Part shown: positions 19,681 to 62,295 of the stretch, one piece after another | Layout: each line of letters opens with the position of its first letter | How positions within the stretch are numbered: the first letter of the stretch is position 1 | Virus record (IMG/VR): IMGVR_UViG_3300033182_000674 | Span: 155,677 to 219,676 of that record | Length of the DNA stretch: 64,000 nucleotides | Reading direction: 5' to 3' (one strand) | Made by a program: the position numbers and the translations under genes | The notes under the pieces: model-generated | What the model saw: only the letters and a program-made list of their open reading frames with translations | Database searches by the model: none | What the model was told of the DNA's origin: nothing

Positions 19681-22194
19681 TTATTTAATCTTTTGCTTTA
19701 ATTCTTCTACTTCTGATTTAAGCTCTTTAACTGCTTCGATAAGCAAACCAACTACGTTACCGTAAGCAACTTGTAAGTAACCATCATCACCTTGTACAAC
19801 AGCTTCTGGTAATACTGCTTGTAATTCTTGTGCGATTACACCAGTACCACGTTGACCATTTGATACTTTGTTAAATGTTACGCCACGAACCTGATCTACC
19901 TTTGCCATTGCATCAGTAATTAATTCGACATTTTCTTTTAATCTTGAGTCAGAGTATGCAGTAACATTACCTTGTGAAGTAATATCACCATCTGCATCAA
20001 TAGTACCAGTAACATATAAGTCACCATTTATTTGTGTTGAATCAGTATTTAATAATCCAGTAAAACTAACACTACCTACTGAATCAACTGTTAATCCACC
20101 AGCGGAAAGTCCACCACTAAATGTTGCACTATCATTAAATACCATTACACCAGTAATGGTATCACCATTAACATTTACATATGTACTATCTACTAATGAC
20201 TCAACAAATGCTGTATTAATTTTACTTCTAACATGATTTGAATCTATAATATTTAATACTTCACTTGAATCAACTGCAGGATCTACTCTAAAGTTAATAT
20301 AAGCTGAATCAATGATTGTATTATAATCGAAGTCATCAGCGCGTGCATTTACATATGCGCTGTCAACAACACCTAACCAATCTGCTCTATAGTTAATATA
20401 ATCTGAATCAACAATATTAGTTACAAAACCAGAATCTCTGTAAATATCTACTTGACGAGCTTGGACATAAGATGAATCAATGACTGTGATATAATCAAAG
20501 TCATCAGCACGAGCATTTACATATGCGCTATCTACGTATGATGCAATAGTTGAAGAACCAATTGTTTGAACATGGCCATGAGTATCAAATGTGATTGCAT
20601 CTACAAATTGACCTGGTGTTGATGTAACATCACTAATGATAATGTTATCATGTCTAGCCATAATCCAGCTTGAGTCAACCATTTTATAAAGTTCAGCTGA
20701 GTCAACAGTACCAATTGCTCTATCAGCAATATAAGATGAATCAACTAAGTTAATAACTTGTTGTTGTGTTAGTCTTAAATTAATTGCTGCAAGTAATGTA
20801 CCATATGCATCGCTATCATTATTCAATGCATCCGCAATTTCTTTAAGTGTATCTAATTGTCCAGGTGCGCCATTAATAAGAGCAGCAATCGCACTGTCAA
20901 TTAAACTAACTGCTTCTTGTGAGTCTAAGTAAATATGATCAATTAAGTTTTCAACATATGATTGATTGACAACCGTAGTAATTCTAGTATCTAAATTACC
21001 TGCAGTAGATTTAACACTTACAACATGACCATAATTATCTACATTAACACCAGTAACATACGTATTTGTGGAATCAATTACTTCAAACGTTTTAGACGAT
21101 GATAAAACACCAGTTGAATCATGATGAGACATAACATATGCGTTATTAACATAATCACTTATGTCTTGAGTACCAACTTCTACTGGGTGACCTTTATCAT
21201 CAAAAATTATATCACTAAGGTATGTGCCAGCAGATGGGAAAACATTAGAAAGAGTTGGTTCTTTATCTGCATGTCGATCCATTACATATGGTGCATCAAC
21301 AAAACGATTTGTAACTGAAGCAAGTGCAGCAGTTAGATATTTACTATTAAGAGCTGGATCTTGAACTGCTTCATCAACTAGTTCTATACCAGTCATTGCT
21401 CCAACAGAATCACCCCAAACATCTGCAACATAAGCAGTATATTTAGTTAATGAACTATCAACCAATGCTGCAATATAATCACTATCGATAAAGATTGATA
21501 AGTCAGATGAAAGAATTGCGTCTAAGCTTTGAGTTGAGTATGCAGTTAAGTGACCTTGAGCATCAAATGTTAGACCATTAACAAACTCATCTGGATTAGT
21601 TGCTAAGTTATTTAATGTTGGTGCTTTAGGATCGTGATTAATTGTAATTGTTCTATTGGCATCAGTAAATTGATTAGCACCTGACACACTTAAGTTATCA
21701 CCTGCGACAATTTGAAAATCAAACTCGCTTCTTGGAATAAAACCACTATCTAAATCAACAGAACTAATTGATGTAATATGTGCATGATTATCAATAGTAA
21801 TATTTGAAACAACATTATTATTCGTATTACTAGTATTTGCTGCTCCAGCTTGTTTCAACGCGTGTTTAATTTGAATAACAAAATCAGAATCACCTTTGGT
21901 GGTGAACATATCTTCATTTAGACCAAAATTAGCAGAATCACCATTATTAACTGAAAGCATACCATCAGGAGTTTTAATCGTAATTAATCCATTAAAGATA
22001 TTGGCTGCTATTTCATCAATAATTAATTGCTGAGCGGTTGCTGCACTAATTGCTTGGTTTGTTACAAAGTATTTTAAAGCAGTTCCAAGATTTAGTTTGG
22101 AAACTCCATATAAATCAGTTGTATTAGCGACAATAAGATAATTAGAATCTCTAAGATCCTGTTCCGCCATTGAGTCTAAATCTAATATTCTCAT
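19681..22194 (-). CDS. Tail fibre protein with C-terminal peptidase S74 intramolecular chaperone (837 aa)
   Basis: C-terminal YSDSRLKENVELI...GVIAQELQAVLPEAV...VAYGNVVGLLIEAVKELKSEVEELK; fibre motif APGQLDTLKEIADALNND; DSAYV repeats. Confidence 0.85.
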   Translation of the reverse strand: MRILDLDSMAEQDLRDSNYLIVANTTDLYGVSKLNLGTALKYFVTNQAISAATAQQLIIDEIAANIFNGLITIKTPDGMLSVNNGDSANFGLNEDMFTTKGDSDFVIQIKHALKQAGAANTSNTNNNVVSNITIDNHAHITSISSVDLDSGFIPRSEFDFQIVAGDNLSVSGANQFTDANRTITINHDPKAPTLNNLATNPDEFVNGLTFDAQGHLTAYSTQSLDAILSSDLSIFIDSDYIAALVDSSLTKYTAYVADVWGDSVGAMTGIELVDEAVQDPALNSKYLTAALASVTNRFVDAPYVMDRHADKEPTLSNVFPSAGTYLSDIIFDDKGHPVEVGTQDISDYVNNAYVMSHHDSTGVLSSSKTFEVIDSTNTYVTGVNVDNYGHVVSVKSTAGNLDTRITTVVNQSYVENLIDHIYLDSQEAVSLIDSAIAALINGAPGQLDTLKEIADALNNDSDAYGTLLAAINLRLTQQQVINLVDSSYIADRAIGTVDSAELYKMVDSSWIMARHDNIIISDVTSTPGQFVDAITFDTHGHVQTIGSSTIASYVDSAYVNARADDFDYITVIDSSYVQARQVDIYRDSGFVTNIVDSDYINYRADWLGVVDSAYVNARADDFDYNTIIDSAYINFRVDPAVDSSEVLNIIDSNHVRSKINTAFVESLVDSTYVNVNGDTITGVMVFNDSATFSGGLSAGGLTVDSVGSVSFTGLLNTDSTQINGDLYVTGTIDADGDITSQGNVTAYSDSRLKENVELITDAMAKVDQVRGVTFNKVSNGQRGTGVIAQELQAVLPEAVVQGDDGYLQVAYGNVVGLLIEAVKELKSEVEELKQKIK

Positions 22195-22213: not shown

Positions 22214-23548
22214 TTAGTACGTTCTTGAAGTCGCATTACTTACAGCACCGACTGTTTCGTTGGTAGTATTAAATTGAATCATTCTTACTTTTAATGACCA
22301 TTTAGTTGCATCTAAATCAGCATGAACTCCAGTTTCTTTTATTGGTGCTGTACCAATACCATTAGCACCGATTGTAATTGCCATTGCTGAACTATTACCA
22401 GTTACTACATTAGGTGCAACCGCTGTTAATACTGCGCCAACACCATAGCTTAAACTAGTATGACGTGTTGGTTCAACTGTAGGTGCTGGTATAACATCTC
22501 CAACTGTATATGACTGATCACTTGTTTTACAAACAAGTTCTATTTGATAGAAATCTGGAGTACCTGATCTACCATCAGCAGCATATGGGTTATTACCACT
22601 TTGAGTATAATCATAAAGTAAATAATAAACACCAGCATTAGCAAGTGTTGTAACTTCATACTCAACAACACTGTATAATGTATTACTAAAAGCATTTAAT
22701 CCTTGAACTAACGTTGCAGGTGTAACAATTAAGTTATCTGAAGTTAATTGTGCAACGTCTGAATCTTCTGCAAATAGAGTTGAGCTATGATCATTTACTA
22801 AACCAGTAGTTGTAATTTGATTTGTTGTTACGCTATTGAATGTAACATCTGACGTTGTTTCAACAGCTTGACCAATACTAATAGCATTATTAGTAATAGA
22901 TACACCAGTACCTTCATTGGCTGCATTCAGTGCTACTGGAATAGAAAGTGTACTTAAATCAATTTCAAGTAAACCGGTTGTATTATCATAAGATAAGCCA
23001 TTATTAGGCGTAATTGAAAGAGCTGCTCTTGCTCTAGCATCAGTATAATAAAGATTACCGGTACCTTCTAAAATTTGGTCAGTATTATATTGACCACCAC
23101 CACCTTGTTGAGCAGCATCAACAATATCAGCTAAAACTATAGGCAATTGACTTGATACTAAGGTACCAGTAATTTTACCTGCATCGATATTTGGAATTAA
23201 AGCTGGACTTAAAACACCAGAAGTAATTTTACTTGCAGGTAAATTAGGAATATCTGTTACTTGTATATCATTTGATACAAAAGAAAATACACCAGTTAAT
23301 GGATTATAACTAAGTTCTGTATGAGATGAACCAGTACCAACAACTTCAACCATATCTCTAATAGTAGAAGGTTTTGTTCTTTCAATAAGTGTATTGACCG
23401 CATCAGTAATAGATGAATAATCTCCATCACCTTGGTCATTAATTGAACCAACACCTCCGACATTTGTCGATAAGGTATTAATTTTCTTTCTTAAAGTACC
23501 AATAGTGTCGGTAATATCAATAACAATTGGATTAGGATCTGCTGCCAT
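22214..23548 (-). CDS. Fibre/whisker-like structural protein, paralogue of 32126..33235
   Basis: Track ORF starts at TTG 23563; ATG at 23548 preferred. IPNLPASKITSGVL / IPNIDAGKITG fibre repeats; N-terminus aligns with the 369-aa protein. Confidence 0.7.
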   Translation of the reverse strand: MAADPNPIVIDITDTIGTLRKKINTLSTNVGGVGSINDQGDGDYSSITDAVNTLIERTKPSTIRDMVEVVGTGSSHTELSYNPLTGVFSFVSNDIQVTDIPNLPASKITSGVLSPALIPNIDAGKITGTLVSSQLPIVLADIVDAAQQGGGGQYNTDQILEGTGNLYYTDARARAALSITPNNGLSYDNTTGLLEIDLSTLSIPVALNAANEGTGVSITNNAISIGQAVETTSDVTFNSVTTNQITTTGLVNDHSSTLFAEDSDVAQLTSDNLIVTPATLVQGLNAFSNTLYSVVEYEVTTLANAGVYYLLYDYTQSGNNPYAADGRSGTPDFYQIELVCKTSDQSYTVGDVIPAPTVEPTRHTSLSYGVGAVLTAVAPNVVTGNSSAMAITIGANGIGTAPIKETGVHADLDATKWSLKVRMIQFNTTNETVGAVSNATSRTY

Positions 23549-23587
23549 AATAGTTTTCTTCAATAGTTAGTAAAAGTTGATTAATAG

Positions 23588-23601: not shown

Positions 23602-24000
23602 CTACGACACAGAGAAAAACTCTTCCTCATAATATTCTCTAATATCAGGTATCATTCCTTCCATTGGAATAGGAAAATCTATATTATCTAATAAAAATTC
23701 ATAAACTTCTGGGCTTTCATCATATGTTTTATAGTATGGATCATTACCATATAACAAATCGGGATCCATTAATAGATCCCTAAAGTCTTCTTGAAAATCT
23801 TGACTTATCCAATATGCATAACAAAAAGCAACAACATAACTTTTTGCTGGATATATCCATTCATCTACTCTTTCATAAAAATGCCGTAATGCATTATTCT
23901 TTAAATCATGTGATAAAGTAATTTCTATTTTATTTAGATCATCTTTAAAATAATGGTTTAATTTATGAAATACTTCTTGTCTTATTTTCCATTCTTGCAT
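23602..24000 (-). CDS. Hypothetical protein of the radical SAM cassette (132 aa)
   Basis: ORF overlapping the upstream rSAM gene by 38 nt; aromatic/acidic; no family recognised. Confidence 0.7.
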   Translation of the reverse strand: MQEWKIRQEVFHKLNHYFKDDLNKIEITLSHDLKNNALRHFYERVDEWIYPAKSYVVAFCYAYWISQDFQEDFRDLLMDPDLLYGNDPYYKTYDESPEVYEFLLDNIDFPIPMEGMIPDIREYYEEEFFSVS

Positions 24001-24898
24001 AATCTAATAATCCTTTGTAGCCATTACACGAATTAGTTAGGTCTGTTACATATCTATAATGTTCAGTTAAACAGTGTCCATAATATTCACATTGCTTACA
24101 TATTTCGCTTGTGTTTACTTCAGCTTCATTATCTGCCCATTTCAAATAATCATCAAATGAATCAAGCTCTAAGAAATATTCATTGTCATTCTTATCGAAT
24201 TCTAATACTGCAAATTTGCCATTTGGTGTAATATAAACATGATCATTTGAAAATGCATTATATGTTTTATTTAATGAATCTTCAATATGATATTCATTAA
24301 TAAATTCAAAGCTTTTTTCCACAGGACTTTCTAACCATTTAATAATAAAATCTTCAAAGTCTTTATGTGTTACATTTTGTTGATTAGCTTGATTAGTCGA
24401 ATATGGTTTTATTTCAACTGAAGTAATTGCTCTACACATATTTAATTGTGTAATCATATGATCAACATCCATTTGAATAACCTTTTCTGATGCTAATATA
24501 AGAACAGCAATTGGTACTTCAGACATAAACATATTATTAAATACTTTTTCACTTTGTTCTCTTGCATCGAAATCATATGATACTGATAACGTAATATCAT
24601 CATCAAAGAAAGGTTGATAAACTTTTGAGAAATTAGTATTAATATTAATTTTACCAGTATAATAATTTTTTATAACATTCTTTAACTGATAAAAATAAGA
24701 CTTAGGCATTGCTGTTATTTCTCCGCCATATAAATCTACGTGATCTATATTTGGAACTTGAGATAATAACTCATCTAATTGGCCTAAGTCTATTCGCTTT
24801 TGATCTTTTAATTGCTCAGGTGTTAAATAACAAAAATCACAATTGAAATTACAAAAATAACTTGGATTAATTGATAGATTCATATCTAATATACTCAT
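23963..24898 (-). CDS. Radical SAM protein with C-terminal Cys cluster (311 aa)
   Basis: NPSYFCNFNCDFCY (CxxxCxxC), LYGGE, C-terminal CKQCEYYGHCLTEH...C. Confidence 0.9.
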   Translation of the reverse strand: MSILDMNLSINPSYFCNFNCDFCYLTPEQLKDQKRIDLGQLDELLSQVPNIDHVDLYGGEITAMPKSYFYQLKNVIKNYYTGKININTNFSKVYQPFFDDDITLSVSYDFDAREQSEKVFNNMFMSEVPIAVLILASEKVIQMDVDHMITQLNMCRAITSVEIKPYSTNQANQQNVTHKDFEDFIIKWLESPVEKSFEFINEYHIEDSLNKTYNAFSNDHVYITPNGKFAVLEFDKNDNEYFLELDSFDDYLKWADNEAEVNTSEICKQCEYYGHCLTEHYRYVTDLTNSCNGYKGLLDYARMENKTRSIS

Positions 24899-25916
24899 TA
24901 ATATAAGGTGTTAATTCACGCTCAACTGCATTAGCTTCAAGAATCTTTGGAGCTAACTGTTTCATATGATAGCAATGATCTTCTACCATATTATGATTTT
25001 TTAAATCTTTAATTGTTTTCTTACAACCATTACATATCTCAAACATAGGACATGTGTAACATGCTTGTTTTAAACTACTTAATTCTAAACTATTCATTAA
25101 TGGTGTAAGAAACTCGCCATTCATTTCTCTTTCCCAATCAATGGCCATATCTCTATCATCGCCAAAAGCACCACACGTATAATAGTCACCTTCAGGCTGT
25201 ATAGTTCTTATACCAGCATCACATCCTCTATTTTGTGGACATACTGTTGGTTCACCTTGCAAACGTTTCATCATTTGCATTGTATTAAATTCCCATGAAG
25301 CTAATCCAGCTTCCCATATCTCAACATATTTTTCATATATTTTAGATAAGCGATATGGTTTATCTTGATCGCCACTTGACATTGCATAATTCAATTTACA
25401 TACAACATCCATTTCTTTTGCAAGTTCAACTGTACGTATAGCACTCCATTCATTTTCTTCTGTTATAACAGCAATAAAGTCTGGACGATAACCACAGTGT
25501 TCTAACATTGCATCTGATGCTTTCCAAAAGTCCGCTTCAGTAAATACTTTACCATCACCCATTAGTCTTCCTTTACCATATTGAAATGATGTACATACTC
25601 CAACTCGGGGGTGATTAAATAAATCAACCCATTTTTTTGGTTTAACAACAAATGGCCAAAGATTAGTTGTTAATGATATAGTGGCGTGTGAATCTACTTT
25701 GTCTAAATACTCAATAATCTTCCAATAATAACTTGGATGCATCATTAATGGATCTCCACCATTTACAATAATAGTATTTGTCTCTGGAAATCTATCGATA
25801 AATTGGTAGATACGATCTAGATCTAGTTCTGATGTATGATCATCAGCTATCTTAGTGCTTGAACAGAAAGTGCATTTAAAATTACACTTTTCTGTTGGTT
25901 TAATAATTAAGTCCAT
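24867..25916 (-). CDS. Radical SAM/SPASM protein (349 aa)
   Basis: KPTEKCNFKCTFCSS, NGGDPL, SPASM-like CPQNRGC...YYTC...CYTCPMFEICNGC...C. Confidence 0.92.
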   Translation of the reverse strand: MDLIIKPTEKCNFKCTFCSSTKIADDHTSELDLDRIYQFIDRFPETNTIIVNGGDPLMMHPSYYWKIIEYLDKVDSHATISLTTNLWPFVVKPKKWVDLFNHPRVGVCTSFQYGKGRLMGDGKVFTEADFWKASDAMLEHCGYRPDFIAVITEENEWSAIRTVELAKEMDVVCKLNYAMSSGDQDKPYRLSKIYEKYVEIWEAGLASWEFNTMQMMKRLQGEPTVCPQNRGCDAGIRTIQPEGDYYTCGAFGDDRDMAIDWEREMNGEFLTPLMNSLELSSLKQACYTCPMFEICNGCKKTIKDLKNHNMVEDHCYHMKQLAPKILEANAVERELTPYINEYIRYESIN

Positions 25917-26370
25917 CTATATCATACATAAAGTTGGCGACTATTCTTACATCATCTGTATGAATAACCTTGTGTTGAACGTTTGGTGCTTGGCTTAACA
26001 TAATTAAATCATATTTACTAGGTTGAATAATACCAGTTTTTTCATTATTCATTCTAACCATTAACTCACCATTATTTTTTATATCAGTCATATAATATAA
26101 AAAGAATATATTATAACCTTCTCTTAGATCATTATGCCATTCACATGTAGAATCTTCTGATCCTTTCCATATTGAATGATCTGTTTTATTATAATTACCA
26201 AAAAGCGGTATTACATACTTATCTACAATATATTTATTTGCTTCATTAATATCTATATTGAGCATTTCAAATTGATTATCGTTTACTTCTGGAACATCAA
26301 TAAAAGAATATAACTCCTTATCGATAGTTTGCGCATAACCTTTTATAATAAAATCACTAAAATCAATCAT
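25900..26370 (-). CDS. 2OG-Fe(II) oxygenase-like protein (156 aa)
   Basis: WHND (HxD), following IFFLYYM strand, GELMV, distal QHKV and RIVANF. Confidence 0.7.
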   Translation of the reverse strand: MIDFSDFIIKGYAQTIDKELYSFIDVPEVNDNQFEMLNIDINEANKYIVDKYVIPLFGNYNKTDHSIWKGSEDSTCEWHNDLREGYNIFFLYYMTDIKNNGELMVRMNNEKTGIIQPSKYDLIMLSQAPNVQHKVIHTDDVRIVANFMYDIDGLNY

Positions 26371-26851
26371 CTAATACTGCTTTAAAAGTAAATTTTAAAA
26401 GTTTTCTTGGAGAAGTATTTTCAAAGTTTGTTGCTCTATGTAAAACATCACCATTAAAGAATACTGCTCTTCCTTTTGCAATATTCACATTATGGATATT
26501 GCCGTTATAATCCTTTATTTCTAATGGATCTTCACAATCTTCTAAGTATACAACAACAGTAAAACTAACGTCAGGAATTTCTATATTATCTTCTTCTAAA
26601 TTATCTGGATGAAATTTATAAGAACCATAATCTAAATTATTCGCTAATAATTTTGCGGTACTTAATTTATATCTTTTACCAAGATAATCATTAATTTTTT
26701 CTATAACATAAAAAGCACTCGGTGGAATAATACAATCAGATCTTCCATCACCCCAACTCCAATCTTGAGTTTCATTGGCATATTCTTTAAATATAATATC
26801 GTCAACAAAATCGTCAACAACTTTCCATTCTGGATCAAATACTCTAATCAT
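26363..26851 (-). CDS. 2OG-Fe(II) oxygenase-like protein (162 aa)
   Basis: FHPD (HxD), SFTVVVYL, GRAVFFNGDVLHRA, RKLLKF (2OG-binding Arg). Confidence 0.8.
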   Translation of the reverse strand: MIRVFDPEWKVVDDFVDDIIFKEYANETQDWSWGDGRSDCIIPPSAFYVIEKINDYLGKRYKLSTAKLLANNLDYGSYKFHPDNLEEDNIEIPDVSFTVVVYLEDCEDPLEIKDYNGNIHNVNIAKGRAVFFNGDVLHRATNFENTSPRKLLKFTFKAVLDD

Positions 26852-27866
26852 TCATTTTATCTGCATATTTAAATGTTTCTTTATAAACACAACCATCAAA
26901 GTCACGTTCTAATCTTTTCCAATCATTTCTAACAAAACAACTAAATGGACATCTATTATAATATTCACAACTAAAGCAATCATGATCATTTAAAAACTTT
27001 TCAATAATTGCATCATTGGTATCAGATATTATAGTAATAAAGTCTTCGGTATCTTTATGTTGTCTTATTCTACAACTTGATGTCCTATTATCTGCTTCCA
27101 ATAATAATTTATTTACACTGGGACAACTCATTTTATTTAATGATGCGTTATTAGTAAAAGCAGATAAGTTAGTACATTCTGGATAATGATCTAAAAGGAA
27201 TATATTAAAATTATATAAGTCTCTCTCACTTGGAACAAGTGTATTTGGAACAGTAGGACCTGGTGTCAATTGATCCCAATAACATGGGAATAGACTATAG
27301 AGATAATCAAAATATTCATCACCATTATTTTGAAGGCGATACATACTTTGTTTAGTTGCAACAAGACATATTAAACTAATATGGTCCTTAAAAATTTCTA
27401 TATTTTCTTTGAATATTTTAAATTGTGCTGGATTAAATCTACCTGTTATATCATAACTTACACTTAATTTTAAATTATGTTTTTGTAGCCATTCAAGCAT
27501 AATAGATGTATTATCAAATACAAGATTACTTACAAAATTGAATGTTACAGACTTATCTAATTCATTACATAATTCATTTACACCATCTATAAATTCGTCA
27601 TAGATTGGTAGATATTCATCAAACAAATGATCTTGAAATAATTCGCCACCCATTATATTAAGAATATAATGATATTTGGTATTGGTATTAAAAAAGTCTC
27701 TTATTACATCAAGCTTGGAAAGTATTTGCTCTTTACTTTGACCAATTTTAGATTCATGATCTTGAAAGCAGTGTATACAACGTAAATTACATTCCTCAAA
27801 AAAGAATATTTCTAATTCTCCAGAGTCAGGTATTTTACTTTCTATAACACTTTGTAAATAACTCAT
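26844..27866 (-). CDS. Radical SAM protein with C-terminal Cys cluster (340 aa)
   Basis: FEECNLRCIHCFQ, MGGELF, C-terminal CPS...SSC...CFSCEYYNRCPFSC...C. Confidence 0.9.
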   Translation of the reverse strand: MSYLQSVIESKIPDSGELEIFFFEECNLRCIHCFQDHESKIGQSKEQILSKLDVIRDFFNTNTKYHYILNIMGGELFQDHLFDEYLPIYDEFIDGVNELCNELDKSVTFNFVSNLVFDNTSIMLEWLQKHNLKLSVSYDITGRFNPAQFKIFKENIEIFKDHISLICLVATKQSMYRLQNNGDEYFDYLYSLFPCYWDQLTPGPTVPNTLVPSERDLYNFNIFLLDHYPECTNLSAFTNNASLNKMSCPSVNKLLLEADNRTSSCRIRQHKDTEDFITIISDTNDAIIEKFLNDHDCFSCEYYNRCPFSCFVRNDWKRLERDFDGCVYKETFKYADKMND

Positions 27867-27883
27867 AATAAAAATAAATTAAT

Positions 27884-28933
27884 TTACTTAATTGTAAATT
27901 TAGCTAATTTATCTAATTCATCTTCTTGTTTAAGCGATCTAATATATGTAACAAATGGCAATACAATAGAACCACCTAGTGTAAATGGCAAATAGATTAA
28001 AGCAATTTTTTCATCTAAAATTTCTTGTAAAGCAGATTCAAACTCTTCATCTGTTAGTTCACCTTTATAAACCGAATCAAGATATTTAAACATCATTTCA
28101 GAAGAAATTGGTGATTGAATACCGGTTCCGCTTTGATTGAATGCCATATCACCATAAATTGCACTAGTAACTTTTTGTACAATATCAACGAGCTCTTTAA
28201 CTTCTTTTTCTGTACCATTAGATATATCTAATTTAGAACCAGCTCCACCAACATATGCTTTTCCAATCTCTATGCTTTTTCTGTTATTCCAACAATTATT
28301 AACAAATGGTTTCATACCAGGAAGCTCTTTATAGTTTTTAATAGTTTTCCCTGAGCCGCCTAATAATTCTTGTAAATCATTATCTAAAATTAATATATCA
28401 ATATGGCGACGACACTCTAAAATAGTATCTTCATATTCACGCTTAATCATTTTAGACATTAATGTTTTGAGTTTACTCTTATGGCTAGATCCAGAATCAG
28501 CAAACACAGATGCAATTAAAAATTCATATGAAGGCATATAATCAATATGACTATAATCTCCTTCTTCTGTATCTTCAAAAGAATCTTTCATAATTTGAGC
28601 TAATTGTGTATTTTGCTTTCCATACATTTCAAGTGTATGGTTATAACAATCAACCCATACATCAAATGAATCTTGATCAAAGTTTACGGTTGACTTAAGC
28701 CAATGAGTAGCAATTTGTGCAAAATGAAATGTATCAGCATAGATAGTAACTTTTTCATTCTTAGTAAAGCCAAGTTGAATAACTGATTGTGGTGTTAATG
28801 TTTCTGCCGCAGCAATTATAGATTTAGTATTATAAACATTACCACCATATTCTTTTGATACAACAATACAAGTGTCTAATGTATTAAGATAAGTATCTTG
28901 TTCTAAAAATACATTGTTAAATAAATGGATCAT
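27884..28933 (-). CDS. Hypothetical protein of the radical SAM cassette (349 aa)
   Basis: Long ORF with a 4-nt ATGA overlap with the upstream gene; no family recognised. Confidence 0.8.
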   Translation of the reverse strand: MIHLFNNVFLEQDTYLNTLDTCIVVSKEYGGNVYNTKSIIAAAETLTPQSVIQLGFTKNEKVTIYADTFHFAQIATHWLKSTVNFDQDSFDVWVDCYNHTLEMYGKQNTQLAQIMKDSFEDTEEGDYSHIDYMPSYEFLIASVFADSGSSHKSKLKTLMSKMIKREYEDTILECRRHIDILILDNDLQELLGGSGKTIKNYKELPGMKPFVNNCWNNRKSIEIGKAYVGGAGSKLDISNGTEKEVKELVDIVQKVTSAIYGDMAFNQSGTGIQSPISSEMMFKYLDSVYKGELTDEEFESALQEILDEKIALIYLPFTLGGSIVLPFVTYIRSLKQEDELDKLAKFTIK

Positions 28934-29637
28934 GCTTTTAGCTCCTGCATTGTTTGCAATTTATCAAACATTTTATGATAGTCTTCTATATCTAAACTAC
29001 CTGATGCCATACTATGTGTTAAAATAAACATTGGGTTGTTTCTATTTGCCCAATAACTAAATAAGTTTTTACCTTTAAAAATATATTCATTGAAAAACTT
29101 AGGATAATATCTTAGGTTATCTGATTTAGTTTTTTCAAGCAATGAATATAATGAATCTCTTTTTAATAAACTAACAAAATTAACACCTTTCATATCACCA
29201 TCATCTTCAGCAATTGGTGCATTTTCACTAAACTCTTTAAAAGTTTCGTCTTGAATTGAATGCATATTATATAGTGTTAAACTATCAATTCTTTGTTCCC
29301 AAATATCTAGTTCTTTAGAATACTGTTCTAATACATCTGAATCTATAACTGGAATAATACCTCTTTTTTGCATTAATAAATTAATAATAACTTCTTCAAG
29401 CAATGGTATATTAACTATCGATGTTGAGTTAAGATATACTCCAACCATTTCAACCAATTCATCTGGCTCAGTAATATTTAAATCACAAGGAATATCTAAA
29501 TTACTCAAATATGTAATAAGCTTTTCGCCTTTTAAATTTGAATCTTTATAGTTAATAATAAATTTAGTTTCTTTATCTTCAAAATATAGTTTCAACAAAT
29601 CTATGGAAATAGGTGCTGTTGTTTCAATAATATTCAT
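28930..29637 (-). CDS. Hypothetical protein of the radical SAM cassette (235 aa)
   Basis: GAGGAA Shine-Dalgarno right after the precursor stop; no family recognised. Confidence 0.8.
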   Translation of the reverse strand: MNIIETTAPISIDLLKLYFEDKETKFIINYKDSNLKGEKLITYLSNLDIPCDLNITEPDELVEMVGVYLNSTSIVNIPLLEEVIINLLMQKRGIIPVIDSDVLEQYSKELDIWEQRIDSLTLYNMHSIQDETFKEFSENAPIAEDDGDMKGVNFVSLLKRDSLYSLLEKTKSDNLRYYPKFFNEYIFKGKNLFSYWANRNNPMFILTHSMASGSLDIEDYHKMFDKLQTMQELKA

Positions 29638-29646
29638 AATTTCCTC

Positions 29647-30606
29647 TTATCTTCTGCCACGCGAACCATGACAAGAACTATGACAGCTCGAATGACAAAC
29701 ATCTGTTTGAATAGCTAAATCAGCTGTAGTAGATTGTGCAACCTGCTCCCAAGCGCTTTTTAGAGCATTAAAGTAATTTTCAAGTACACCTGCGGTTATA
29801 ACATAACCTTCTTCAACGCGCATAATCCCATTAATAGCATGTATTCCACCGGTCCAATTTGCTTTTACTTGTCCTACATCAGTTAAATATGAATCATCTA
29901 ATAATGCGTATTTGGTTTCATCAAATGCGATACCAGGATTAGCATAAGTTCCCTTATTTCCGCCTCCGCCAGTTACATTTAATTTAACATTCATTGTTCT
30001 AACACGAGTATATCTATTTGTTTCCCATAATATAGCTTTCCATATTACATATGCTGCAATTGGATTTTCTACTCGCTCAACAATCATATCACCTTGATCA
30101 TCTAAAATTGGTTCAATTGTTAAAATACCATCTGCTGCAGTATCTGCTTGTGCTTGAGCTTTAAATGCTTTTTCAACTGTTGAGAACTTCTCAGTTAAAC
30201 ATCTAGCATACCAATATTGTAAACCACCAATTTCAGCATCACGTTGTAAGTGTGTATTATATAACTTAGCTACTTTATCAACTAATGCTGGACCAGTACC
30301 AGTTTCATATAATAACCAGTCTTCTCTTGGACCATGCGGTAGTGGTCCGTCCCACATTGTAAGATATGTGCCATCTGATTTGCGTATTTTGGCTTTATAA
30401 AAAGTACCTAAAACAAACCAAGACCCATCACTTGGAATTACTTGAGTTATAGGTGTGCCCCAACCGCTAAAGGTAAATCCTTCATACGGTAAATTGTTAG
30501 CAGACCAGACATTAGGATCAGTATGAAAACTATAAACTGCTTTCGCATAATCTAAAAATCTTGGTACAATTTCTTCTTTTTTAACAGGATTAGTTAAACT
30601 CGCCAT
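29647..30606 (-). CDS. Putative modification substrate / precursor protein with C-terminal CHSSCHSSCHGSRGRR (319 aa)
   Basis: Directly downstream of and overlapping an rSAM/SPASM gene; terminal (C-H-x-S)x3 motif; internal DUF4214-like segment. The CDS is secure; the substrate role is inferred. Confidence 0.7.
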   Translation of the reverse strand: MASLTNPVKKEEIVPRFLDYAKAVYSFHTDPNVWSANNLPYEGFTFSGWGTPITQVIPSDGSWFVLGTFYKAKIRKSDGTYLTMWDGPLPHGPREDWLLYETGTGPALVDKVAKLYNTHLQRDAEIGGLQYWYARCLTEKFSTVEKAFKAQAQADTAADGILTIEPILDDQGDMIVERVENPIAAYVIWKAILWETNRYTRVRTMNVKLNVTGGGGNKGTYANPGIAFDETKYALLDDSYLTDVGQVKANWTGGIHAINGIMRVEEGYVITAGVLENYFNALKSAWEQVAQSTTADLAIQTDVCHSSCHSSCHGSRGRR

Positions 30607-31630
30607 TTTGTTTATCCAAATGAATCATTAATAGTTTAGGTGCAGGACAGACATCGCCTTCCCACGGTAATTGGTGGCAATCTCCACCACAATATTTAAA
30701 TACAGGACATGAAAAACATTTAGGATTTCTTCCTCGTTCTTCAGCTATATTTTGTAATCTTCTAGGACTATTTATAAGGTTTTCTATAGAATCGTTTATA
30801 TGACCAAATTGAAATGTTGGCGCAGAATTAGGACAACCTGAAATAGTACCAGTTGCATTAATGGTGAAGATCTTTTCTTCGCAATCTCTACAGAAAGTAC
30901 CACATGTATTTAATCCATTTTCAAACTTAGCATATACATCTTCAAGGAATGAATTTTCAAACCAATTTCTTGCACCAACTTCTTCTGATTGTAAATGCAT
31001 TTTTAAGAACCATTCATTAATTTCCATATTGGATGGGAATATATCTGGATGCTGATTTGCATTACCATCTCTTGTTAATCTTTCAAATGAAACTTCTTGA
31101 ACACCAAGCTCTTTACAAAACTCTAATACTTTAATTGGTTCCATGTTTATTAGTCCTTTTGTAACACTAATAAACATTCTAATTGTTACGCCACGTTTTA
31201 ATAATGATTTAACATTTTTATGCCATAGATTATATTGTCTATCATTATCAAATCGAATATCTGGATCCCATGATGTACCAATACGATTATTTAAACACTC
31301 TTCAATAAATGAATAATGCTCATCATACATTTTAAATGTTAAATTTGATGTAATGCCCCATGACATATCAAGCCATAAGTCTTTACACTCATTATAGACT
31401 TTACGCATTTCAGAGACATGAACAAGAAAAGGCTCACCACCATGAAATTCACAATGAGCCGTATCTAATAAATTAGGTCTATGTTGTCTAAAACGCTTTA
31501 ACCAATCTGCTATTTTATTTGGATTCCAATATTTCTTTGGACCGTTGATTCCATTCGTAAAGCAATGACGGCAATTAAGATTACACGTTTCAGTTGTCTT
31601 TAGGTAGAACATCCATTGCATCATCAGCAT
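30590..31630 (-). CDS. Radical SAM/SPASM protein (346 aa; start may be 31624)
   Basis: KTTETCNLNCRHCF, FHGGEPF, SPASM-like CGTFCRDC...SGC...CFSCPVFKYCGGDC...C; AAGGA lies 5 nt before ATG 31624. Confidence 0.92.
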   Translation of the reverse strand: MLMMQWMFYLKTTETCNLNCRHCFTNGINGPKKYWNPNKIADWLKRFRQHRPNLLDTAHCEFHGGEPFLVHVSEMRKVYNECKDLWLDMSWGITSNLTFKMYDEHYSFIEECLNNRIGTSWDPDIRFDNDRQYNLWHKNVKSLLKRGVTIRMFISVTKGLINMEPIKVLEFCKELGVQEVSFERLTRDGNANQHPDIFPSNMEINEWFLKMHLQSEEVGARNWFENSFLEDVYAKFENGLNTCGTFCRDCEEKIFTINATGTISGCPNSAPTFQFGHINDSIENLINSPRRLQNIAEERGRNPKCFSCPVFKYCGGDCHQLPWEGDVCPAPKLLMIHLDKQNGEFN

Positions 31631-32111
31631 CCTTTAGTTTGTTTTGTATAAAATTTTCAAGTCCAAAACTTAACATTAATGATTCATAGTAATTTGTTGC
31701 GCAATGAGGTGTGTTTGCTGGTATAAAAATAGATTCACCTTCATTTAATATAACTTCATCATTTCCAACAATTAATGTTTTAGTTCCTTCTACACAAAGC
31801 ATATAAACATCATCTGGATCTTTATGCATTGGAAATGAGTATGCATCTTTAGTTGCATAAAAAGCATGACATGTCACTGGACCATTATGTTCGTAATGTA
31901 ATGCTAATTCCTTACAATAATCAAATATCTCTTGATTATATTTTTCTAAACTTTCAATCTTTATAGTGGCGTGGCTATATTTTGATAATTCAAGAGAACT
32001 TTCAAGAACGGTATTTCTACCTTCATCATCTATAATAGACACAATCCTTTCTTCGTAAGGAATCAAATCTTTATTATATAATATTTCAACCAAATTGTAA
32101 ACTGAAAACAT
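31590..32111 (-). CDS. JmjC/cupin-type oxygenase (173 aa)
   Basis: SFPMHKDPDDVYMLCVEGTKTL and GESIFIPANTPHCA: HxD...H triad in a JmjC (YcfD/ROX-like) context. Confidence 0.85.
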   Translation of the reverse strand: MFSVYNLVEILYNKDLIPYEERIVSIIDDEGRNTVLESSLELSKYSHATIKIESLEKYNQEIFDYCKELALHYEHNGPVTCHAFYATKDAYSFPMHKDPDDVYMLCVEGTKTLIVGNDEVILNEGESIFIPANTPHCATNYYESLMLSFGLENFIQNKLKDADDAMDVLPKDN

Positions 32112-32125
32112 GACAAATTCTTTCG

Positions 32126-33235
32126 TTATAATTTAAGAATACATTCAACTAATTTTAAAGCTTCGCTATAATTATCTTCTAACGCAATACCAACTAATCT
32201 TCCAGTACCATTTACAGAAGCTATACCATTACTTGATACATATACACCTTCACCTTTCTTAACTGGATCAGTAACTTTAACAGGAACTCGACCAACTAGT
32301 GCAAGAGGTACACCACCTTCTAATTCACTATTCATAAGAACAGCTGGCTTTTCAGAGATAACACCCACAGGACACACTGTTGCATTGGCTGCGGTTACTT
32401 CTTTTTCTCCACCAACCATCATTACTGTACCAACTTCATATTCTTCATCTGGTAAATATTTCTCAGCCAAGTCAGCGTATTGAGCAAATTGAGCAACACC
32501 AGACATAAAGGTAATGTATGCATTAGAAAATGGACTACCGGCTGTACCGATTTGACGACCAGATCCTGATGCTTTAATATTGGCCGCCATTGTGACGTCA
32601 TCATTAAATGTTTTTAAGCTATTAATCGCTTGATTAACATCCGTATACACAACACCTGATGGCATTACCGCACGATCTAATTGCGCGCCTGATGTGGCAA
32701 TCTTACTAATTGGAATAGTAGGTAATAAAGCTAAATCAAATGTTTCACCAAAAGAAGCTGATGTTCTAGATGCAGGTAACGACGGAATAGTATTCAAATA
32801 TAGAACACCTGTGTCGATCCAACTCGCATCTAATAATGGAATTCTACCACGGCCTAATACACCAGAATTAATTTTATTTGCATCTAATGATGGAATTCTT
32901 AGTGGATCAAATTGACCAGTAGTAATTTTTGCTGCACTTAAACTAGGAATATCGGTTTCTTGTAATACATCACATGTATATGTAAAGACAGCATTAGATG
33001 GATCATATGTTAAATTACTATATGTTCCTTGACCATTTTTTGTAACAGTAAATAAGTTTTTCGCTTCGGTTTCAGTGATAAACTTAGTTTCCATTGAATT
33101 AATTGCGTCAACAATAGTAACATCAGTATCAGTAATTAGATTATCTAAATCACCAACCCATGTGCTAAGACAATTCGTCTTTTGACGCCATGCTTCTAGC
33201 GAATTACTTAAATCAACATATATCGTTCTAGCCAT
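32126..33235 (-). CDS. Fibre protein with C-terminal peptidase G2-like autoproteolytic chaperone (369 aa)
   Basis: LEAWRQKTN N-terminus, IPSLDANKINSG repeats, C-terminal YADLAEKY...GVISEKPAVLMN...ALVGRVPVKV...KGEGVYVS...VGIALED. Confidence 0.75.
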   Translation of the reverse strand: MARTIYVDLSNSLEAWRQKTNCLSTWVGDLDNLITDTDVTIVDAINSMETKFITETEAKNLFTVTKNGQGTYSNLTYDPSNAVFTYTCDVLQETDIPSLSAAKITTGQFDPLRIPSLDANKINSGVLGRGRIPLLDASWIDTGVLYLNTIPSLPASRTSASFGETFDLALLPTIPISKIATSGAQLDRAVMPSGVVYTDVNQAINSLKTFNDDVTMAANIKASGSGRQIGTAGSPFSNAYITFMSGVAQFAQYADLAEKYLPDEEYEVGTVMMVGGEKEVTAANATVCPVGVISEKPAVLMNSELEGGVPLALVGRVPVKVTDPVKKGEGVYVSSNGIASVNGTGRLVGIALEDNYSEALKLVECILKL

Positions 33236-40773: not shown

Positions 40774-42203
40774 TACGCATTGCCTCCATCAATAACTGGA
40801 TTAGTTACGCTGCCCCATGTAGCATAATTAGAACCTGTACTACATTCAGTTAATTCGACAACAATCTTAATATCTTCTGTTTGGTTGATTACTCTTTCAA
40901 CAGCAGTTCTATTATGCAAATAAAGAATATCACCAGACCAAGGATCAACTTCAGGCTTAACTCTTGGATCAGCAATCGTTGCATTACCAATGCCACCTTG
41001 TTCTGTAATAGTTTCACCAGCTTGGAAAGCAACATAACCAGTGCTATCATTTTGGTGATACCATAATTCTGTTCCAGTGTTATTAATATCATCAACAATA
41101 CCTACAGCACCAGATGTTGAACCTTCAAAATATCTATCTTTTGTAAATGAAATTGGACATGCAGACAATGTCATTGAATATAAAGACTTACCAGTTACAT
41201 CAGTAAATGGATTGCCTTGTGCAGAATCCATTGGATCTTTTAGAATTGCAATTTGTCTAAAGTCTTGTAAAGTAATAAAGTCATCATCATCACCAGCAAT
41301 TTTAACATTAAACATTACTGAATTACATAATAGATCTGACGGTGCATCTTTACCAAAACCTTTATTAGAACTAATTACTGGTCTAACAACTGCACCAACA
41401 CCATTTGAATCAACTAATGTTAGAAGTGCACCATCAACTCCTGAGATATAATCTAATGTAGATGAATCATTTTTATATTCAACTTTAGCAATACCACCTG
41501 TAGAAGAATCAACAAAAATGTCTACCTTATTAGTTACTTGCTCATTAATATTTAATTTAACATTTGAAGAGTAACCGCTACCGCTATCATCAACAATAAA
41601 TGAAGTAATCATTTTAGGTCTAGCTGCGGTTTGAACTTCATATTGTTTTAGAGCAATACCATTAGAATTAGAATCTACAAAACCAATTGTTTGAGTAGGC
41701 ATATAATTCTTAGACATAAACAATGATGCTTTTAATGTAGATACGGTGTACAAGAATTTCCATACATAACCATCTGATAATTCAAATGGATCATTATTTG
41801 CAGCAGTTGGTTGAACAGTAGAAGGAACTGGAACACCTTGATCATTTCTACCAGTTCTTAAACAAACATAAACACCATAGTCATTATTTAAAACAAAGAA
41901 AGGTGAACTATATTCACTTAATCTTAGCTTATCGTCATATTGAGAATATACAGTTCCTTTTTTCCAGTCAAATCTTTCTACTACTAAAGATGCAGCACTA
42001 ATTTTAATAATGCCTTGCATACCTTTTCTGAAATCATTTTCATTAATGTAGTTATTGATAGGCATATCAGGTGAATCTAAATTATTTGCCCAAGCCTCAG
42101 ACTTACCTACTGCGACATAATAGTTTGAAGTAGGATTACCAATTTCTCTAACTAAGAAACTTAATAATTCCTTTTTAAATCTGTCTGTAACGATTGCTGA
42201 CAT
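40773..42203 (-). CDS. gp8: Baseplate wedge subunit gp8
   Basis: NYYVAVGKSEAW, RFDWKKGTVYSQYDD, YGVYVCL, DGYVWKFLYTV, SGDILYLHNRTAVER...EDIKIVVE; position after gp6/gp7. Confidence 0.9.
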   Translation of the reverse strand: MSAIVTDRFKKELLSFLVREIGNPTSNYYVAVGKSEAWANNLDSPDMPINNYINENDFRKGMQGIIKISAASLVVERFDWKKGTVYSQYDDKLRLSEYSSPFFVLNNDYGVYVCLRTGRNDQGVPVPSTVQPTAANNDPFELSDGYVWKFLYTVSTLKASLFMSKNYMPTQTIGFVDSNSNGIALKQYEVQTAARPKMITSFIVDDSGSGYSSNVKLNINEQVTNKVDIFVDSSTGGIAKVEYKNDSSTLDYISGVDGALLTLVDSNGVGAVVRPVISSNKGFGKDAPSDLLCNSVMFNVKIAGDDDDFITLQDFRQIAILKDPMDSAQGNPFTDVTGKSLYSMTLSACPISFTKDRYFEGSTSGAVGIVDDINNTGTELWYHQNDSTGYVAFQAGETITEQGGIGNATIADPRVKPEVDPWSGDILYLHNRTAVERVINQTEDIKIVVELTECSTGSNYATWGSVTNPVIDGGNA

Positions 42204-42204
42204 T

Positions 42205-44421: not shown

Positions 44422-44422
44422 A

Positions 44423-46270: not shown

Positions 46271-46271
46271 C

Positions 46272-46721: not shown

Positions 46722-46742
46722 ATGTTAAAACTCTTTTTCTTA

Positions 46743-46750
46743 TATTTATA
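46743..46750 (-). promoter_or_regulatory. T4-type late promoter TATAAATA
   Basis: Exact consensus in the intergenic gap 22 nt upstream of gp25. Confidence 0.8.
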
Positions 46751-46753
46751 CCT

Positions 46754-48787: not shown

Positions 48788-48791
48788 TAGA

Positions 48792-60938: not shown

Positions 60939-60948
60939 GGAATAAGAA

Positions 60949-62292: not shown

Positions 62293-62295
62293 TAA

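What the first reader, a model, noticed from the sequence alone, without database searches (positions are those of the whole stretch)
23963..31630. Four divergent radical SAM paralogues in two architectural pairs
The 346-aa and 349-aa enzymes have fuller SPASM-like Cys sets. The 340-aa and 311-aa enzymes end in CxxCEYYxxC motifs, and the 311-aa one has His in place of the fourth Cys and few upstream Cys. Their low mutual similarity suggests division of labour (different bonds or substrates) or heteromeric pairs, as with HxsB/HxsC.
Basis: partly seen in the sequence, partly recalled or inferred. Interest (0 to 1): 0.6.

Follow-up and report, generated by a model that had tools for sequence, protein, structure and literature searches.

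The report
Phage radical-SAM cassette for CHxS-tail protein
Four very different radical-SAM enzymes in this jumbo-phage genome form a fixed, widely conserved and so far undescribed gene set that most likely chemically modifies the invariant Cys-His-x-Ser C-terminal tail of a protein encoded among the tail-fibre genes.

Summary
Four radical SAM ORFs lie at 30590-31630 (A), 24867-25916 (B), 26844-27866 (C) and 23963-24898 (D), all on the minus strand. They are the only such genes in the 219.7-kb virus genome.

They are four old orthologue groups, not recent copies. Paralogues score 19-41 bits against each other. Orthologues in Ralstonia phage RSL2 and Agrobacterium phage Atu_ph07 score 149-426 bits. 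In 55 viral loci found through B alone, C, D and the small protein p132 occur in 55 and A in 54.

The proposed pairs (A+B, C+D) are not supported:
- A and B keep 8 conserved C-terminal Cys.
- C keeps the canonical 7-Cys SPASM set.
- Only D is reduced, to 4 Cys plus an invariant His.
- A and C are the closest pair.

The likely substrate is the 319-aa protein at 29647-30606. Its terminal CHSSCHSSCHGSRGRR motif ends every one of about 190 related ORFs from viral contigs and from contigs of bacterial genome bins, some of them Bdellovibrionota chromosomes.

No curated family cut-off is reached, including HxsB and HxsC. The chemistry, the substrate link and any enzyme complexes remain inferred. I rate this a new variant of radical-SAM protein maturation, interest 0.7.

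The parts
30590..31630 (-). Radical SAM/SPASM enzyme A (346 aa). CxxxCxxC at C16/C20/C23. Eight conserved C-terminal Cys: C247, C250, C266, C305, C308, C314, C318, C328.
   Evidence: phrog_1802 E 3.5e-62. TIGR04085 SPASM 35.8 bits, above the cut-off of 27. Cys conservation 100% in 48 orthologues. Full-length profile match to anSME 4k37 with six of the eight conserved Cys (C250, C266, C305, C308, C314, C318) on its cluster ligands. Orthologues Atu_ph07 gp171 and RSL2 ORF067, 332-338 bits.
24867..25916 (-). Radical SAM/SPASM enzyme B (349 aa). CxxxCxxC at C11/C15/C18. Eight conserved C-terminal Cys: C226, C232, C248, C286, C289, C295, C298, C315.
   Evidence: PF04055 36.5 bits, above the cut-off of 29.5. 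phrog_1802 E 4.3e-57. Cys conservation. The cysteines align to anSME auxiliary ligands; C298 is offset by one position. Orthologues Atu gp165 and RSL2 ORF075, 416-426 bits.
26844..27866 (-). Radical SAM enzyme C (340 aa). CxxxCxxC at C26/C30/C33. Canonical 7-Cys SPASM pattern: C248, C265, C297, C300, C306, C310, C326.
   Evidence: phrog_1802 E 1.5e-27. Cys conserved in 96-100% of 45 orthologues (A2). N-terminal profile match to CteB 5wgg. Closest paralogue is A. Orthologues Atu gp168 and RSL2 ORF072, 149-191 bits.
23963..24898 (-). Radical SAM enzyme D (311 aa). CxxxCxxC at C16/C20/C23. Reduced C-terminal set C267, C270, C276, H280, C291. No first-auxiliary-cluster cysteines. H220 nearly invariant.
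   Evidence: phrog_1802 E 4.5e-31. Invariant columns in 40 sequences. N-terminal profile match to the peptide epimerase YydG 8ai3, E 3.1e-8, residues 6-142. Orthologue RSL2 ORF077, 245 bits. A D-group ORF not annotated as radical SAM in Atu_ph07.
29647..30606 (-). CHxS-tail protein (319 aa), the likely substrate. It has a conserved core of about 187 aa (residues 1-50 and 180-300), an inserted DUF4214-like segment (51-179) and the terminal 16 residues CHSSCHSSCHGSRGRR.
   Evidence: Translation. phrog_35144 match to the tail end. Core homology to 187-190-aa relatives. AlphaFold2 core pLDDT 70-92, no PDB match (best Z 3.1). The only such tail in the genome.
29650..29697 (-). The (C-H-x-S)x3-R-G-R-R motif itself, immediately before the stop codon.
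   Evidence: Always the extreme C-terminus. This holds in 130/130 ORFs of the pattern-found set and 19/19 in contigs of bacterial genome bins. It also holds in 59/59 tail ORFs found independently through enzyme B, with no relaxed variants. The three Ser positions that follow each C-H-x are 99-100% Ser although the search pattern allowed other residues.
31590..32111 (-). Small cupin / JmjC-like protein (173 aa) with conserved H96, D98 and H136.
   Evidence: PF07883 E 1.5e-10; PF08007 JmjC_2 E 2.9e-7. Conserved triad in 84 sequences. Present in 52/55 loci.
23602..24000 (-). p132, a 132-aa protein of unknown fold. It overlaps the end of D by 38 nt.
   Evidence: Present in 55/55 B-ascertained loci. 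Next to D in both viral gene orders. No Pfam, NCBIfam or PADLOC match.
28930..29637 (-). p235, a protein of unknown function directly after the tail protein.
   Evidence: phrog_20767 E 4.9e-55. AlphaFold2 pLDDT 92.4. No structural relative (best Z 4.4 over 51 residues; TM below 0.4). Absent from the alternative gene order with two short tail proteins.
27884..28933 (-). p349n, a 349-aa accessory protein that is not a radical SAM enzyme.
   Evidence: No family match. In 17/55 loci. Orthologue RSL2 ORF069.
25900..26370 (-). 2OG-Fe(II) oxygenase-like protein (156 aa) with conserved H79, D81, H133 and R142.
   Evidence: PF13640 weak hit, E 0.0062. PADLOC 2OG model E 2e-5. Conserved residues in 102 sequences. 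In 39/55 loci.
26363..26851 (-). Second small oxygenase-like protein (162 aa).
   Evidence: phrog_274 E 2.9e-11. Few relatives among the fetched loci. The assignment is weak.
32126..33235 (-). Tail-fibre-like protein (369 aa) with a Peptidase_G2 autoproteolytic-domain segment, heading the cassette.
   Evidence: PF11962 26.2 bits, cut-off 25. phrog_19602 tail fibre. A relative precedes the cassette in 35/55 loci.
22214..23563 (-). Second fibre-like protein (449 aa) closing the cassette. Its N-terminal repeats resemble those of the 369-aa protein.
   Evidence: Sequence. Relatives follow p132 in several loci. No family match.

Best explanation
The four radical SAM proteins are non-redundant members of one conserved maturation cassette. 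Its minimal core is the CHxS-tail protein, enzymes A, B, C and D, the small protein p132 and a JmjC-like cupin. One to three 2OG-oxygenase-like proteins, p235 and p349n are often added.

The cassette sits inside the baseplate and tail-fibre gene block of a jumbo phage.

The most likely mechanism is that the enzymes act in turn on the invariant C-terminal (Cys-His-x-Ser)x3-Arg-Gly-Arg-Arg tail of the co-encoded 319-aa protein, each installing a different modification.
- A and B are anSME-like over their full length and carry two fully ligated auxiliary clusters.
- C is a 7-Cys SPASM enzyme with one open ligand position, the arrangement seen in thioether-forming enzymes such as CteB.
- A, B and C would oxidise or cross-link Cys, His and Ser side chains.
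- D has a single auxiliary cluster and a YydG-like core. It would carry out a different hydrogen abstraction.
- The oxygenases would add hydroxylations.

The product stays on a folded protein body rather than being released as a peptide.

Shown: orthology, co-occurrence, conserved Cys sets, motif invariance and synteny with fibre genes. Inferred: that the tail is the substrate, which bond each enzyme makes, and that the matured protein is part of the virion.
For: - One-to-one orthologues in RSL2 and Atu_ph07 score 149-426 bits; paralogues score 19-41 bits.
- Each group is one side of a tree branch: B 99, C 100, D 97, A 82.
- Co-occurrence in loci ascertained by B alone: C 55/55, D 55/55, p132 55/55, A 54/55, cupin 52/55, tail protein 46/55. 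The remaining loci have the alternative gene order, in which the tail genes lie further from B and may fall outside the fetched flank.
- The tail motif is found in 101 viral contigs and 16 contigs of bacterial genome bins, against roughly 0.001 chance matches by my own estimate. It is always at the extreme C-terminus.
- The genome holds exactly one such tail and exactly four radical SAM genes.
- Loci whose tail has 4 or 5 CHxS repeats do not show more enzymes. L086, with 4 repeats, carries the same A-D set. This fits one bond type per enzyme rather than one repeat per enzyme.
- Group-specific Cys sets are conserved and map onto anSME cluster ligands.
- No N-terminal recognition domain precedes the CxxxCxxC.
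- The surrounding genes are T4-like baseplate wedge and hub genes and long-tail-fibre-like genes.
Against: - No experiment and no structural model links any enzyme to the tail.
- The complex test of D with p132 gave no verdict.
- The tail could instead be a metal-binding or cluster-binding element.
- No enzyme reaches the cut-off of any curated family of known chemistry, so the bond types are guesses.
- The papers I could read on related phages contained no virion proteomics for the tail protein.
- The constancy of C, H and R in the tail is partly built into the search pattern. The B-ascertained set removes most of that bias.
Confidence: 0.6

Rival explanations
1. The enzymes work as obligate heteromeric pairs (A with B, C with D, or an enzyme with a small partner such as p132), as the first reader proposed by analogy with HxsB/HxsC. 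This is compatible with division of labour but adds a structural claim.
For: The genes are tightly packed and overlap: D/p132 by 38 nt and B/D by 32 nt. p132 lies beside D in both viral gene orders. In the HXS system a radical SAM enzyme does bind a small partner, HxsC with HxsD (PMC13128918).
Against: The A+B and C+D pairs have no support from sequence; A and C are the closest pair. In the HXS system no stable HxsB-HxsC association was detected. In a Halobacteriovoraceae genome p132 lies beside A and the cupin, not beside D. The one complex job gave no verdict, which counts neither way.
Confidence: 0.15
2. The radical SAM enzymes act on something other than the CHxS tail: the neighbouring fibre proteins, a small molecule or a cofactor. 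The Cys/His tail would then be a metal site, an Fe-S scaffold or a sulfur carrier serving the enzymes or the fibre.
For: Three Cys and three His at four-residue spacing would make a good metal site. Metal ions on the axis of trimeric phage fibres are known from T4 (general knowledge). The tail protein has a conserved, folded body, unlike a typical leader peptide.
Against: Tail and enzymes co-occur strictly in phages of unrelated lineages and in bacterial chromosomes that lack the phage fibre genes. The three Ser positions that follow each C-H-x are invariant, which a simple metal site does not explain. The best matches of A, B and C among solved structures and curated families are peptide- or protein-modifying SPASM enzymes such as anSME, CteB, PapB and DynA.
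Confidence: 0.15
3. The cassette is a phage-borne counterpart of the bacterial HXS defence. A matured His-x-Ser protein would be used for superinfection exclusion or counter-defence rather than as a virion part.
For: The tail holds three H-x-S triplets. The HXS system uses two radical SAM enzymes and a small protein to mature an HxS-repeat effector that blocks phage DNA entry (PMC13128918).
Against: No HXS family cut-off is approached and the tail protein does not match HxsA. No signal peptide or peptidoglycan-binding domain is apparent in the tail protein (by inspection). PADLOC gives only generic viperin-core hits. The genes lie co-directionally inside the baseplate and fibre block.
Confidence: 0.08
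4. The four genes are redundant, isofunctional duplicates.
For: PHROGs puts all four in one family, phrog_1802.
Against: That family is a remote-homology cluster. Paralogues share only 20-28% identity over parts of their length. Their auxiliary-cluster ligand sets differ. Each paralogue has been kept separately in nearly every locus.
Confidence: 0.02

Closest known systems
HXS anti-phage system (HxsA with His-x-Ser repeats, radical SAM HxsB and HxsC, small protein HxsD; PMC13128918)
   Same: Several radical SAM enzymes and a small accessory protein are encoded beside a protein with short His-x-Ser repeats. In both systems the repeat region of a whole protein, not a released peptide, is the site or presumed site of modification.
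   Different: No family cut-off is approached (HxsB 33 bits against 370; HxsC 32 against 268). The tail protein does not match HxsA. Here the repeat is C-H-x-S x3 with invariant Cys at the very C-terminus, followed by RGRR. There are four enzymes plus oxygenases. The setting is a phage fibre module rather than a bacterial defence island. No signal peptide is apparent.
Anaerobic sulfatase-maturating enzyme (anSME, PDB 4k37)
   Same: It is the best full-length solved relative of A and B. Their conserved cysteines fall on its two auxiliary-cluster ligand sets. From general knowledge, the last repeat plus the first Arg (C-H-G-S-R) has the spacing of the sulfatase motif C-x-P-S-R; this was not tested.
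   Different: Scores are about 40 bits against a family cut-off of 349. No sulfatase domain is present. The target motif lacks the Pro/Ala.
SPASM peptide maturases that form thioether or carbon-carbon cross-links (PapB, CteB, DynA/DarE, and the three-residue cyclophane synthases acting on aromatic-x-x motifs including His)
   Same: They combine a radical SAM core with a SPASM domain and act on short repeated motifs that contain Cys or His. PapB and DynA are the top NCBIfam hits of A and B. CteB is the top solved-structure hit of C.
   Different: All scores are far below the family cut-offs. There is no N-terminal recognition domain. The 'leader' is a 110-300-aa folded protein. The core motif is invariant while the body varies, the reverse of most peptide natural-product systems.
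YydG-type radical SAM peptide epimerases (PDB 8ai3)
   Same: Best solved relative of D (E 3.1e-8).
   Different: The match covers only the N-terminal core (residues 6-142), so it says little about the reaction.

Membership tests
Radical SAM superfamily (PF04055) | CxxxCxxC cluster motif near the N-terminus, and a match to the family model | tested here: met
   The motif is present and 96-100% conserved in all four groups. PF04055 scores: B 36.5 bits, above the cut-off of 29.5; A 27.8 and D 24.9, just below it; C matches only Fer4_12 at 20.2. All four match phrog_1802 strongly.
SPASM domain (TIGR04085; seven-Cys motif C-x9-15-G-x4-C ... C-x2-C-x5-C-x3-C ... C) | The seven cysteines that hold two auxiliary 4Fe-4S clusters | tested here: met
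   This applies to A, B and C. A scores 35.8 bits, above the cut-off of 27. B scores 24.6, just under it, but its eight Cys align to the anSME ligands, one of them offset by one position. C is not detected by the model, yet all seven Cys and the G-x4-C are conserved in its orthologues.
SPASM domain (TIGR04085) | The same seven cysteines, tested in enzyme D | tested here: not met
   D keeps only C267, C270, C276 and C291. The fourth position is an invariant His (H280), and the two upstream Cys are absent in all 40 orthologues. This predicts a single auxiliary cluster at the second site.
HXS system | HxsB (TIGR03978, cut-off 370) and HxsC (TIGR03977, cut-off 267.9) equivalogs | tested here: not met
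   A against HxsB: 33.2 bits, N-terminal 120 residues only. B against HxsC: 32.1 bits. D against HxsC: 15.8 bits.
HXS system | An HxsA repeat protein and an HxsD partner | tested here: not met
   The tail protein, p235, p349n and p132 have no NCBIfam match at E <= 0.01. Three H-x-S triplets are present in the tail.
Anaerobic sulfatase maturase (TIGR03942) | Equivalog score of 349 bits or more | tested here: not met
   A 39.4 bits; B 40.2 bits.
PapB ranthipeptide maturase (NF047865) and DynA (NF041298) | Equivalog score (340 and 450 bits) | tested here: not met
   A 43.6 bits against PapB; B 46.1 bits against DynA.
CXXX-repeat peptide maturase (TIGR04115) | Equivalog score of 350 bits or more, beside a C-x-x-x repeat target | tested here: not met
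   A scores 20.3 bits. The tail is literally a C-x-x-x repeat, so the resemblance lies in the target only.
YydG-type epimerase | Full-length similarity, including the C-terminal cluster domain | tested here: inconclusive
   The profile of D matches 8ai3 only over residues 6-142 (36.5 bits).
2OG/JmjC-type oxygenases (accessory genes) | His-x-Asp ... His iron triad | tested here: met
   Cupin: H96, D98, H136. 156-aa protein: H79, D81, H133 plus R142. All are conserved in at least 85% of 84 and 102 relatives. The Pfam hits are weak for the 156-aa protein.

The most novel reading that the evidence does not exclude
The cassette builds a previously unknown covalently cross-linked, possibly metal-binding Cys/His/Ser cap on the C-terminus of a cell-surface-recognition protein. 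Tail fibres of unrelated jumbo phages and the attachment apparatus of predatory Bdellovibrionota would both use it. In those bacteria the same genes lie in the chromosome beside prepilin-like genes. This would be a new class of radical-SAM-made protein modification serving attachment to, or penetration of, Gram-negative envelopes.
Probability: 0.25. Interest if true: 0.85.

Novelty: new variant of a known kind. Interest (0 to 1): 0.7.

Why it matters
Radical SAM/SPASM enzymes are known to mature peptides and a few proteins. A fixed set of four of them, with oxygenases, aimed at one invariant 16-residue protein tail inside phage tail-fibre modules has not been described in the literature I could search. 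Papers on phages that carry the cassette list these genes only as accessory genes of unknown function.

The system is widespread. At least 339 viral contigs encode a relative of enzyme B. It is also present in culturable phages (RSL2, RSF1, FLC6, SURPRISE13, Atu_ph07, Phosso, pPa_SNUABM_DT01), so it can be tested directly.

It offers four divergent enzymes with graded auxiliary-cluster content acting, presumably, on one short motif. That is a clean case for learning how SPASM variants divide chemistry. If the product is part of the adsorption apparatus, it would add a new kind of post-translational chemistry to phage host recognition.

Tried and rejected
- Complex prediction of D (alignment A7) with p132 (A6): score 0.00, no verdict. 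This is evidence neither for nor against binding.
- Megablast of the region against phage records: no match. tblastn of the tail protein: no match, because the body is divergent and the tail is low-complexity.
- Structure searches led nowhere.
  - Tail-protein model: best Z 3.1 in the PDB, and only its own uncharacterised family in BFVD. The ESM Atlas look-up was also uninformative.
  - p235 model (pLDDT 92.4): best Z 4.4 over 51 residues, Foldseek E above 0.1, atlas TM below 0.4.
- Pfam scan of 40 p132 relatives: nothing consistent.
- PADLOC: only weak viperin-core similarity, so a known defence system is rejected.
- Promoter and terminator scans: not above shuffled expectation.
- The radical SAM cluster of Ralstonia phages RP12/RP31 (PMC5468394) is a different cluster (537-aa enzyme, MgoB-like gene), so its virion proteomics could not be used.
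- The cyanophage S-SCSM2R paper concerns an unrelated radical SAM gene.
- Rejected: the idea that the shared CxxCEYYxxC marks a C+D subfamily.
- The reads tools, the large protein searches and the metagenome scan were not used.

Full report
**What is in the window**

The window is the last 64 kb of a single 219,676-bp virus record with 34% G+C.

From about 15 kb to 54 kb all long ORFs lie on the minus strand. They include T4-like baseplate hub and wedge genes at 40773-50399, a 1817-aa DUF4815 protein, and long-tail-fibre-like proteins.

Between two fibre-like genes lies a run of genes that abut or overlap. The fibre genes are at 32126-33235 (with a Peptidase_G2 autoproteolytic-domain segment) and at 22214-23563. 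In order, the genes between them are:
- cupin, 31590-32111
- radical SAM A, 30590-31630
- a 319-aa protein, 29647-30606
- p235, 28930-29637
- p349n, 27884-28933
- radical SAM C, 26844-27866
- two small oxygenase-like proteins, 26363-26851 and 25900-26370
- radical SAM B, 24867-25916
- radical SAM D, 23963-24898
- p132, 23602-24000

**Checking the observation**

All four enzymes carry an N-terminal CxxxCxxC. All match phrog_1802, with E from 1.5e-27 to 3.5e-62. Pfam and NCBIfam matches are weak, and no curated equivalog cut-off is approached.

A six-frame scan of the whole genome finds exactly these four CxxxCxxC ORFs over 200 aa.

BLAST between the four gives 19-41 bits, at 20-28% identity over partial lengths.

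**Four orthologue groups, not two pairs**

tblastn found the same gene set in isolated jumbo phages: Agrobacterium Atu_ph07, Sinorhizobium Phosso, the Ralstonia/Burkholderia RSL2-RSF1-FLC group, and Pseudomonas pPa_SNUABM_DT01.

Each window enzyme has one clear orthologue:

| Enzyme | Orthologues | Bits |
|---|---|---|
| A | Atu gp171, RSL2 ORF067 | 332-338 |
| B | Atu gp165, RSL2 ORF075 | 416-426 |
| C | Atu gp168, RSL2 ORF072 | 149-191 |
| D | RSL2 ORF077 | 245 |

A D-group ORF that Atu_ph07's record does not annotate as radical SAM also turned up.

A quick maximum-likelihood tree of 86 sequences puts each group on one side of a branch: B 99, C 100, D 97, A 82 (SH-aLRT). The stem branches are long, and A and C are sisters at 92. 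Extra radical SAM genes seen in some other phages form a fifth clade.

Profile-profile comparison agrees. A-C scores 153, A-B 118, B-C 79, C-D 76, B-D 73 and A-D 63.

The conserved cysteines differ by group:
- A keeps eight C-terminal Cys.
- B keeps eight C-terminal Cys.
- C keeps the canonical seven of the SPASM motif, including G-x4-C in its consensus.
- D keeps only C267, C270, C276 and C291. It has an invariant His (H280) where the fourth Cys stands, and no upstream Cys.

In profile alignments to anSME (4k37), the cysteines of A and B fall on the ligands of its two auxiliary clusters.

By analogy with that structure, A and B should hold two fully ligated auxiliary clusters. C should hold two, with one open position. 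D should hold only the second one. This assignment is an inference from motifs, not a measurement.

The 'EYY' shared by the window's C and D is not conserved in the C group.

The C+D 'pair' is not real.

**The tail protein**

The 319-aa protein ends in CHSSCHSSCHGSRGRR. RSL2 ORF068 and Atu_ph07 gp170 differ in length and in most of their sequence, yet end almost identically.

A degenerate DNA pattern for this tail matched 101 viral contigs and 16 contigs of bacterial genome bins. By my own estimate, about 0.001 matches would be expected by chance.

In every ORF the motif is the extreme C-terminus: 130 of 130, and 19 of 19.

Because the pattern fixes C, H and R, I re-ascertained loci through enzyme B alone. 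In that search 339 viral contigs encode a relative, and 80 loci were fetched. All 59 tail-bearing ORFs there carry the strict motif, and no relaxed variant was seen.

The three Ser positions that follow each C-H-x are 99-100% Ser although the pattern allowed other residues. The Gly in RGRR is 88%.

A few tails have four or five CHxS units. One of them, L086, shows the same A-D set.

The body is a real family. The window protein is a ~187-aa core (residues 1-50 and 180-300) with a DUF4214-like insert. AlphaFold2 models the core at pLDDT 70-92. No solved structure matches it.

**Co-occurrence**

In the 55 B-ascertained loci with enough flank, the counts are as follows:

| Gene | Loci (of 55) |
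|---|---|
| C | 55 |
| D | 55 |
| p132 | 55 |
| A | 54 |
| cupin | 52 |
| tail protein | 46 |
| p235 | 46 |
| an oxygenase | 39 |
| p349n | 17 |

Two viral gene orders exist:
- The window's order.
- fibre, two short (~127 aa) tail proteins, C, p132, D, B, A, cupin. This order lacks p235 and p349n.

The minimal core is therefore the tail protein, A-D, p132 and the cupin.

The cupin keeps an H-x-D...H triad. The 156-aa protein keeps H-x-D...H plus Arg.

**Beyond phages**

Nine of the 16 contigs from bacterial genome bins are labelled as Bdellovibrionota families or classes.

In two Halobacteriovoraceae genomes (contigs of 1.29 Mb and 382 kb) the cassette lies among housekeeping genes. It sits beside proteins with prepilin-type N-termini and has no phage fibre genes nearby.

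In a sample of 301 genomes of that phylum, 11 carry a B orthologue at E <= 1e-124.

**What it most likely does**

None of the four enzymes has an N-terminal recognition domain. The genome offers one invariant Cys/His/Ser motif and four enzymes of the class that modifies such residues.

The nearest characterised relatives are:
- anSME, PapB and DynA for A and B
- CteB for C
- YydG, core only, for D

I therefore take the tail to be the substrate and the enzymes to install different modifications. The published HXS system shows that radical SAM enzymes can mature an HxS-repeat protein: a +8 Da change on SHRSS, with an HxsC-HxsD complex (PMC13128918). But every HXS membership test failed here.

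From general knowledge, the last repeat plus Arg (C-H-G-S-R) has the spacing of the sulfatase motif C-x-P-S-R that anSME oxidises. This is a lead, not a result.

**Limits**

The substrate link, the chemistry, any complexes and the virion location are all untested. The single complex job gave no verdict. p235 folds confidently (pLDDT 92.4) but has no structural relative. p132 has no family.

Papers on phages that carry the cassette list these genes only as accessory genes of unknown function (PMC8066314, PMC11898562).

Noticed in passing
L201 (G001:C1:290000-309999), L202, L203 (G002:C7:245000-264999), L204: The same cassette lies in chromosomes of Halobacteriovoraceae (Bdellovibrionota) among housekeeping genes. 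It sits beside proteins with prepilin-type N-termini (L201 9765-11006; L203 7655-8692) and a ~200-aa protein. 11 of 301 sampled genomes of that phylum carry a B orthologue.
   Followed up: partly
L166, L170, L173, L175, L178, L182, L183, L200; L120 (pPa_SNUABM_DT01) 16934-18965: Some viral loci carry two to five further radical SAM genes next to C. These form a separate fifth clade in the tree. This fits the report of a T4-like marine virus genome with 12 radical SAM genes (PMC5332604).
   Followed up: partly
L007, L012, L018, L022, L028, L035, L078 and others: An alternative arrangement has two tandem short (~127 aa) CHxS-tail proteins directly after a fibre gene of up to 3682 aa, with the enzyme genes in a different order. 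p235 and p349n are absent.
   Followed up: partly
L093 1672-2229; L086 4029-4910; L112 864-1433; L115 156-764: Tails with four or five CHxS units instead of three.
   Followed up: partly
window 29647-30606, residues 51-179: The window's tail protein carries a ~130-residue insertion with a DUF4214-like segment that the 187-aa relatives lack. It is modelled at low confidence.
   Followed up: partly
window 462-14345 (-): A single 4627-aa ORF downstream, on the coding (minus) strand, of the tail-fibre block.
   Followed up: no
window 19681-22194 (-) and 32126-33235 (-): Two different self-cleaving chaperone-type C-terminal domains occur in neighbouring fibre proteins: Peptidase_S74 in the 837-aa protein and a Peptidase_G2 segment in the 369-aa protein. 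The 369-aa and 449-aa proteins share N-terminal repeat motifs.
   Followed up: partly
window ~54300 and 60000-64000: Coding strand switches from minus to plus near 54.3 kb. G+C rises from about 0.32 to 0.40 in the last 4 kb, and the GC skew changes sign.
   Followed up: no
window 29650-29673 (-): The last repeat plus the first Arg reads C-H-G-S-R, the same spacing as the sulfatase formylglycine motif C-x-P-S-R. A and B are anSME-like over their full length.
   Followed up: no
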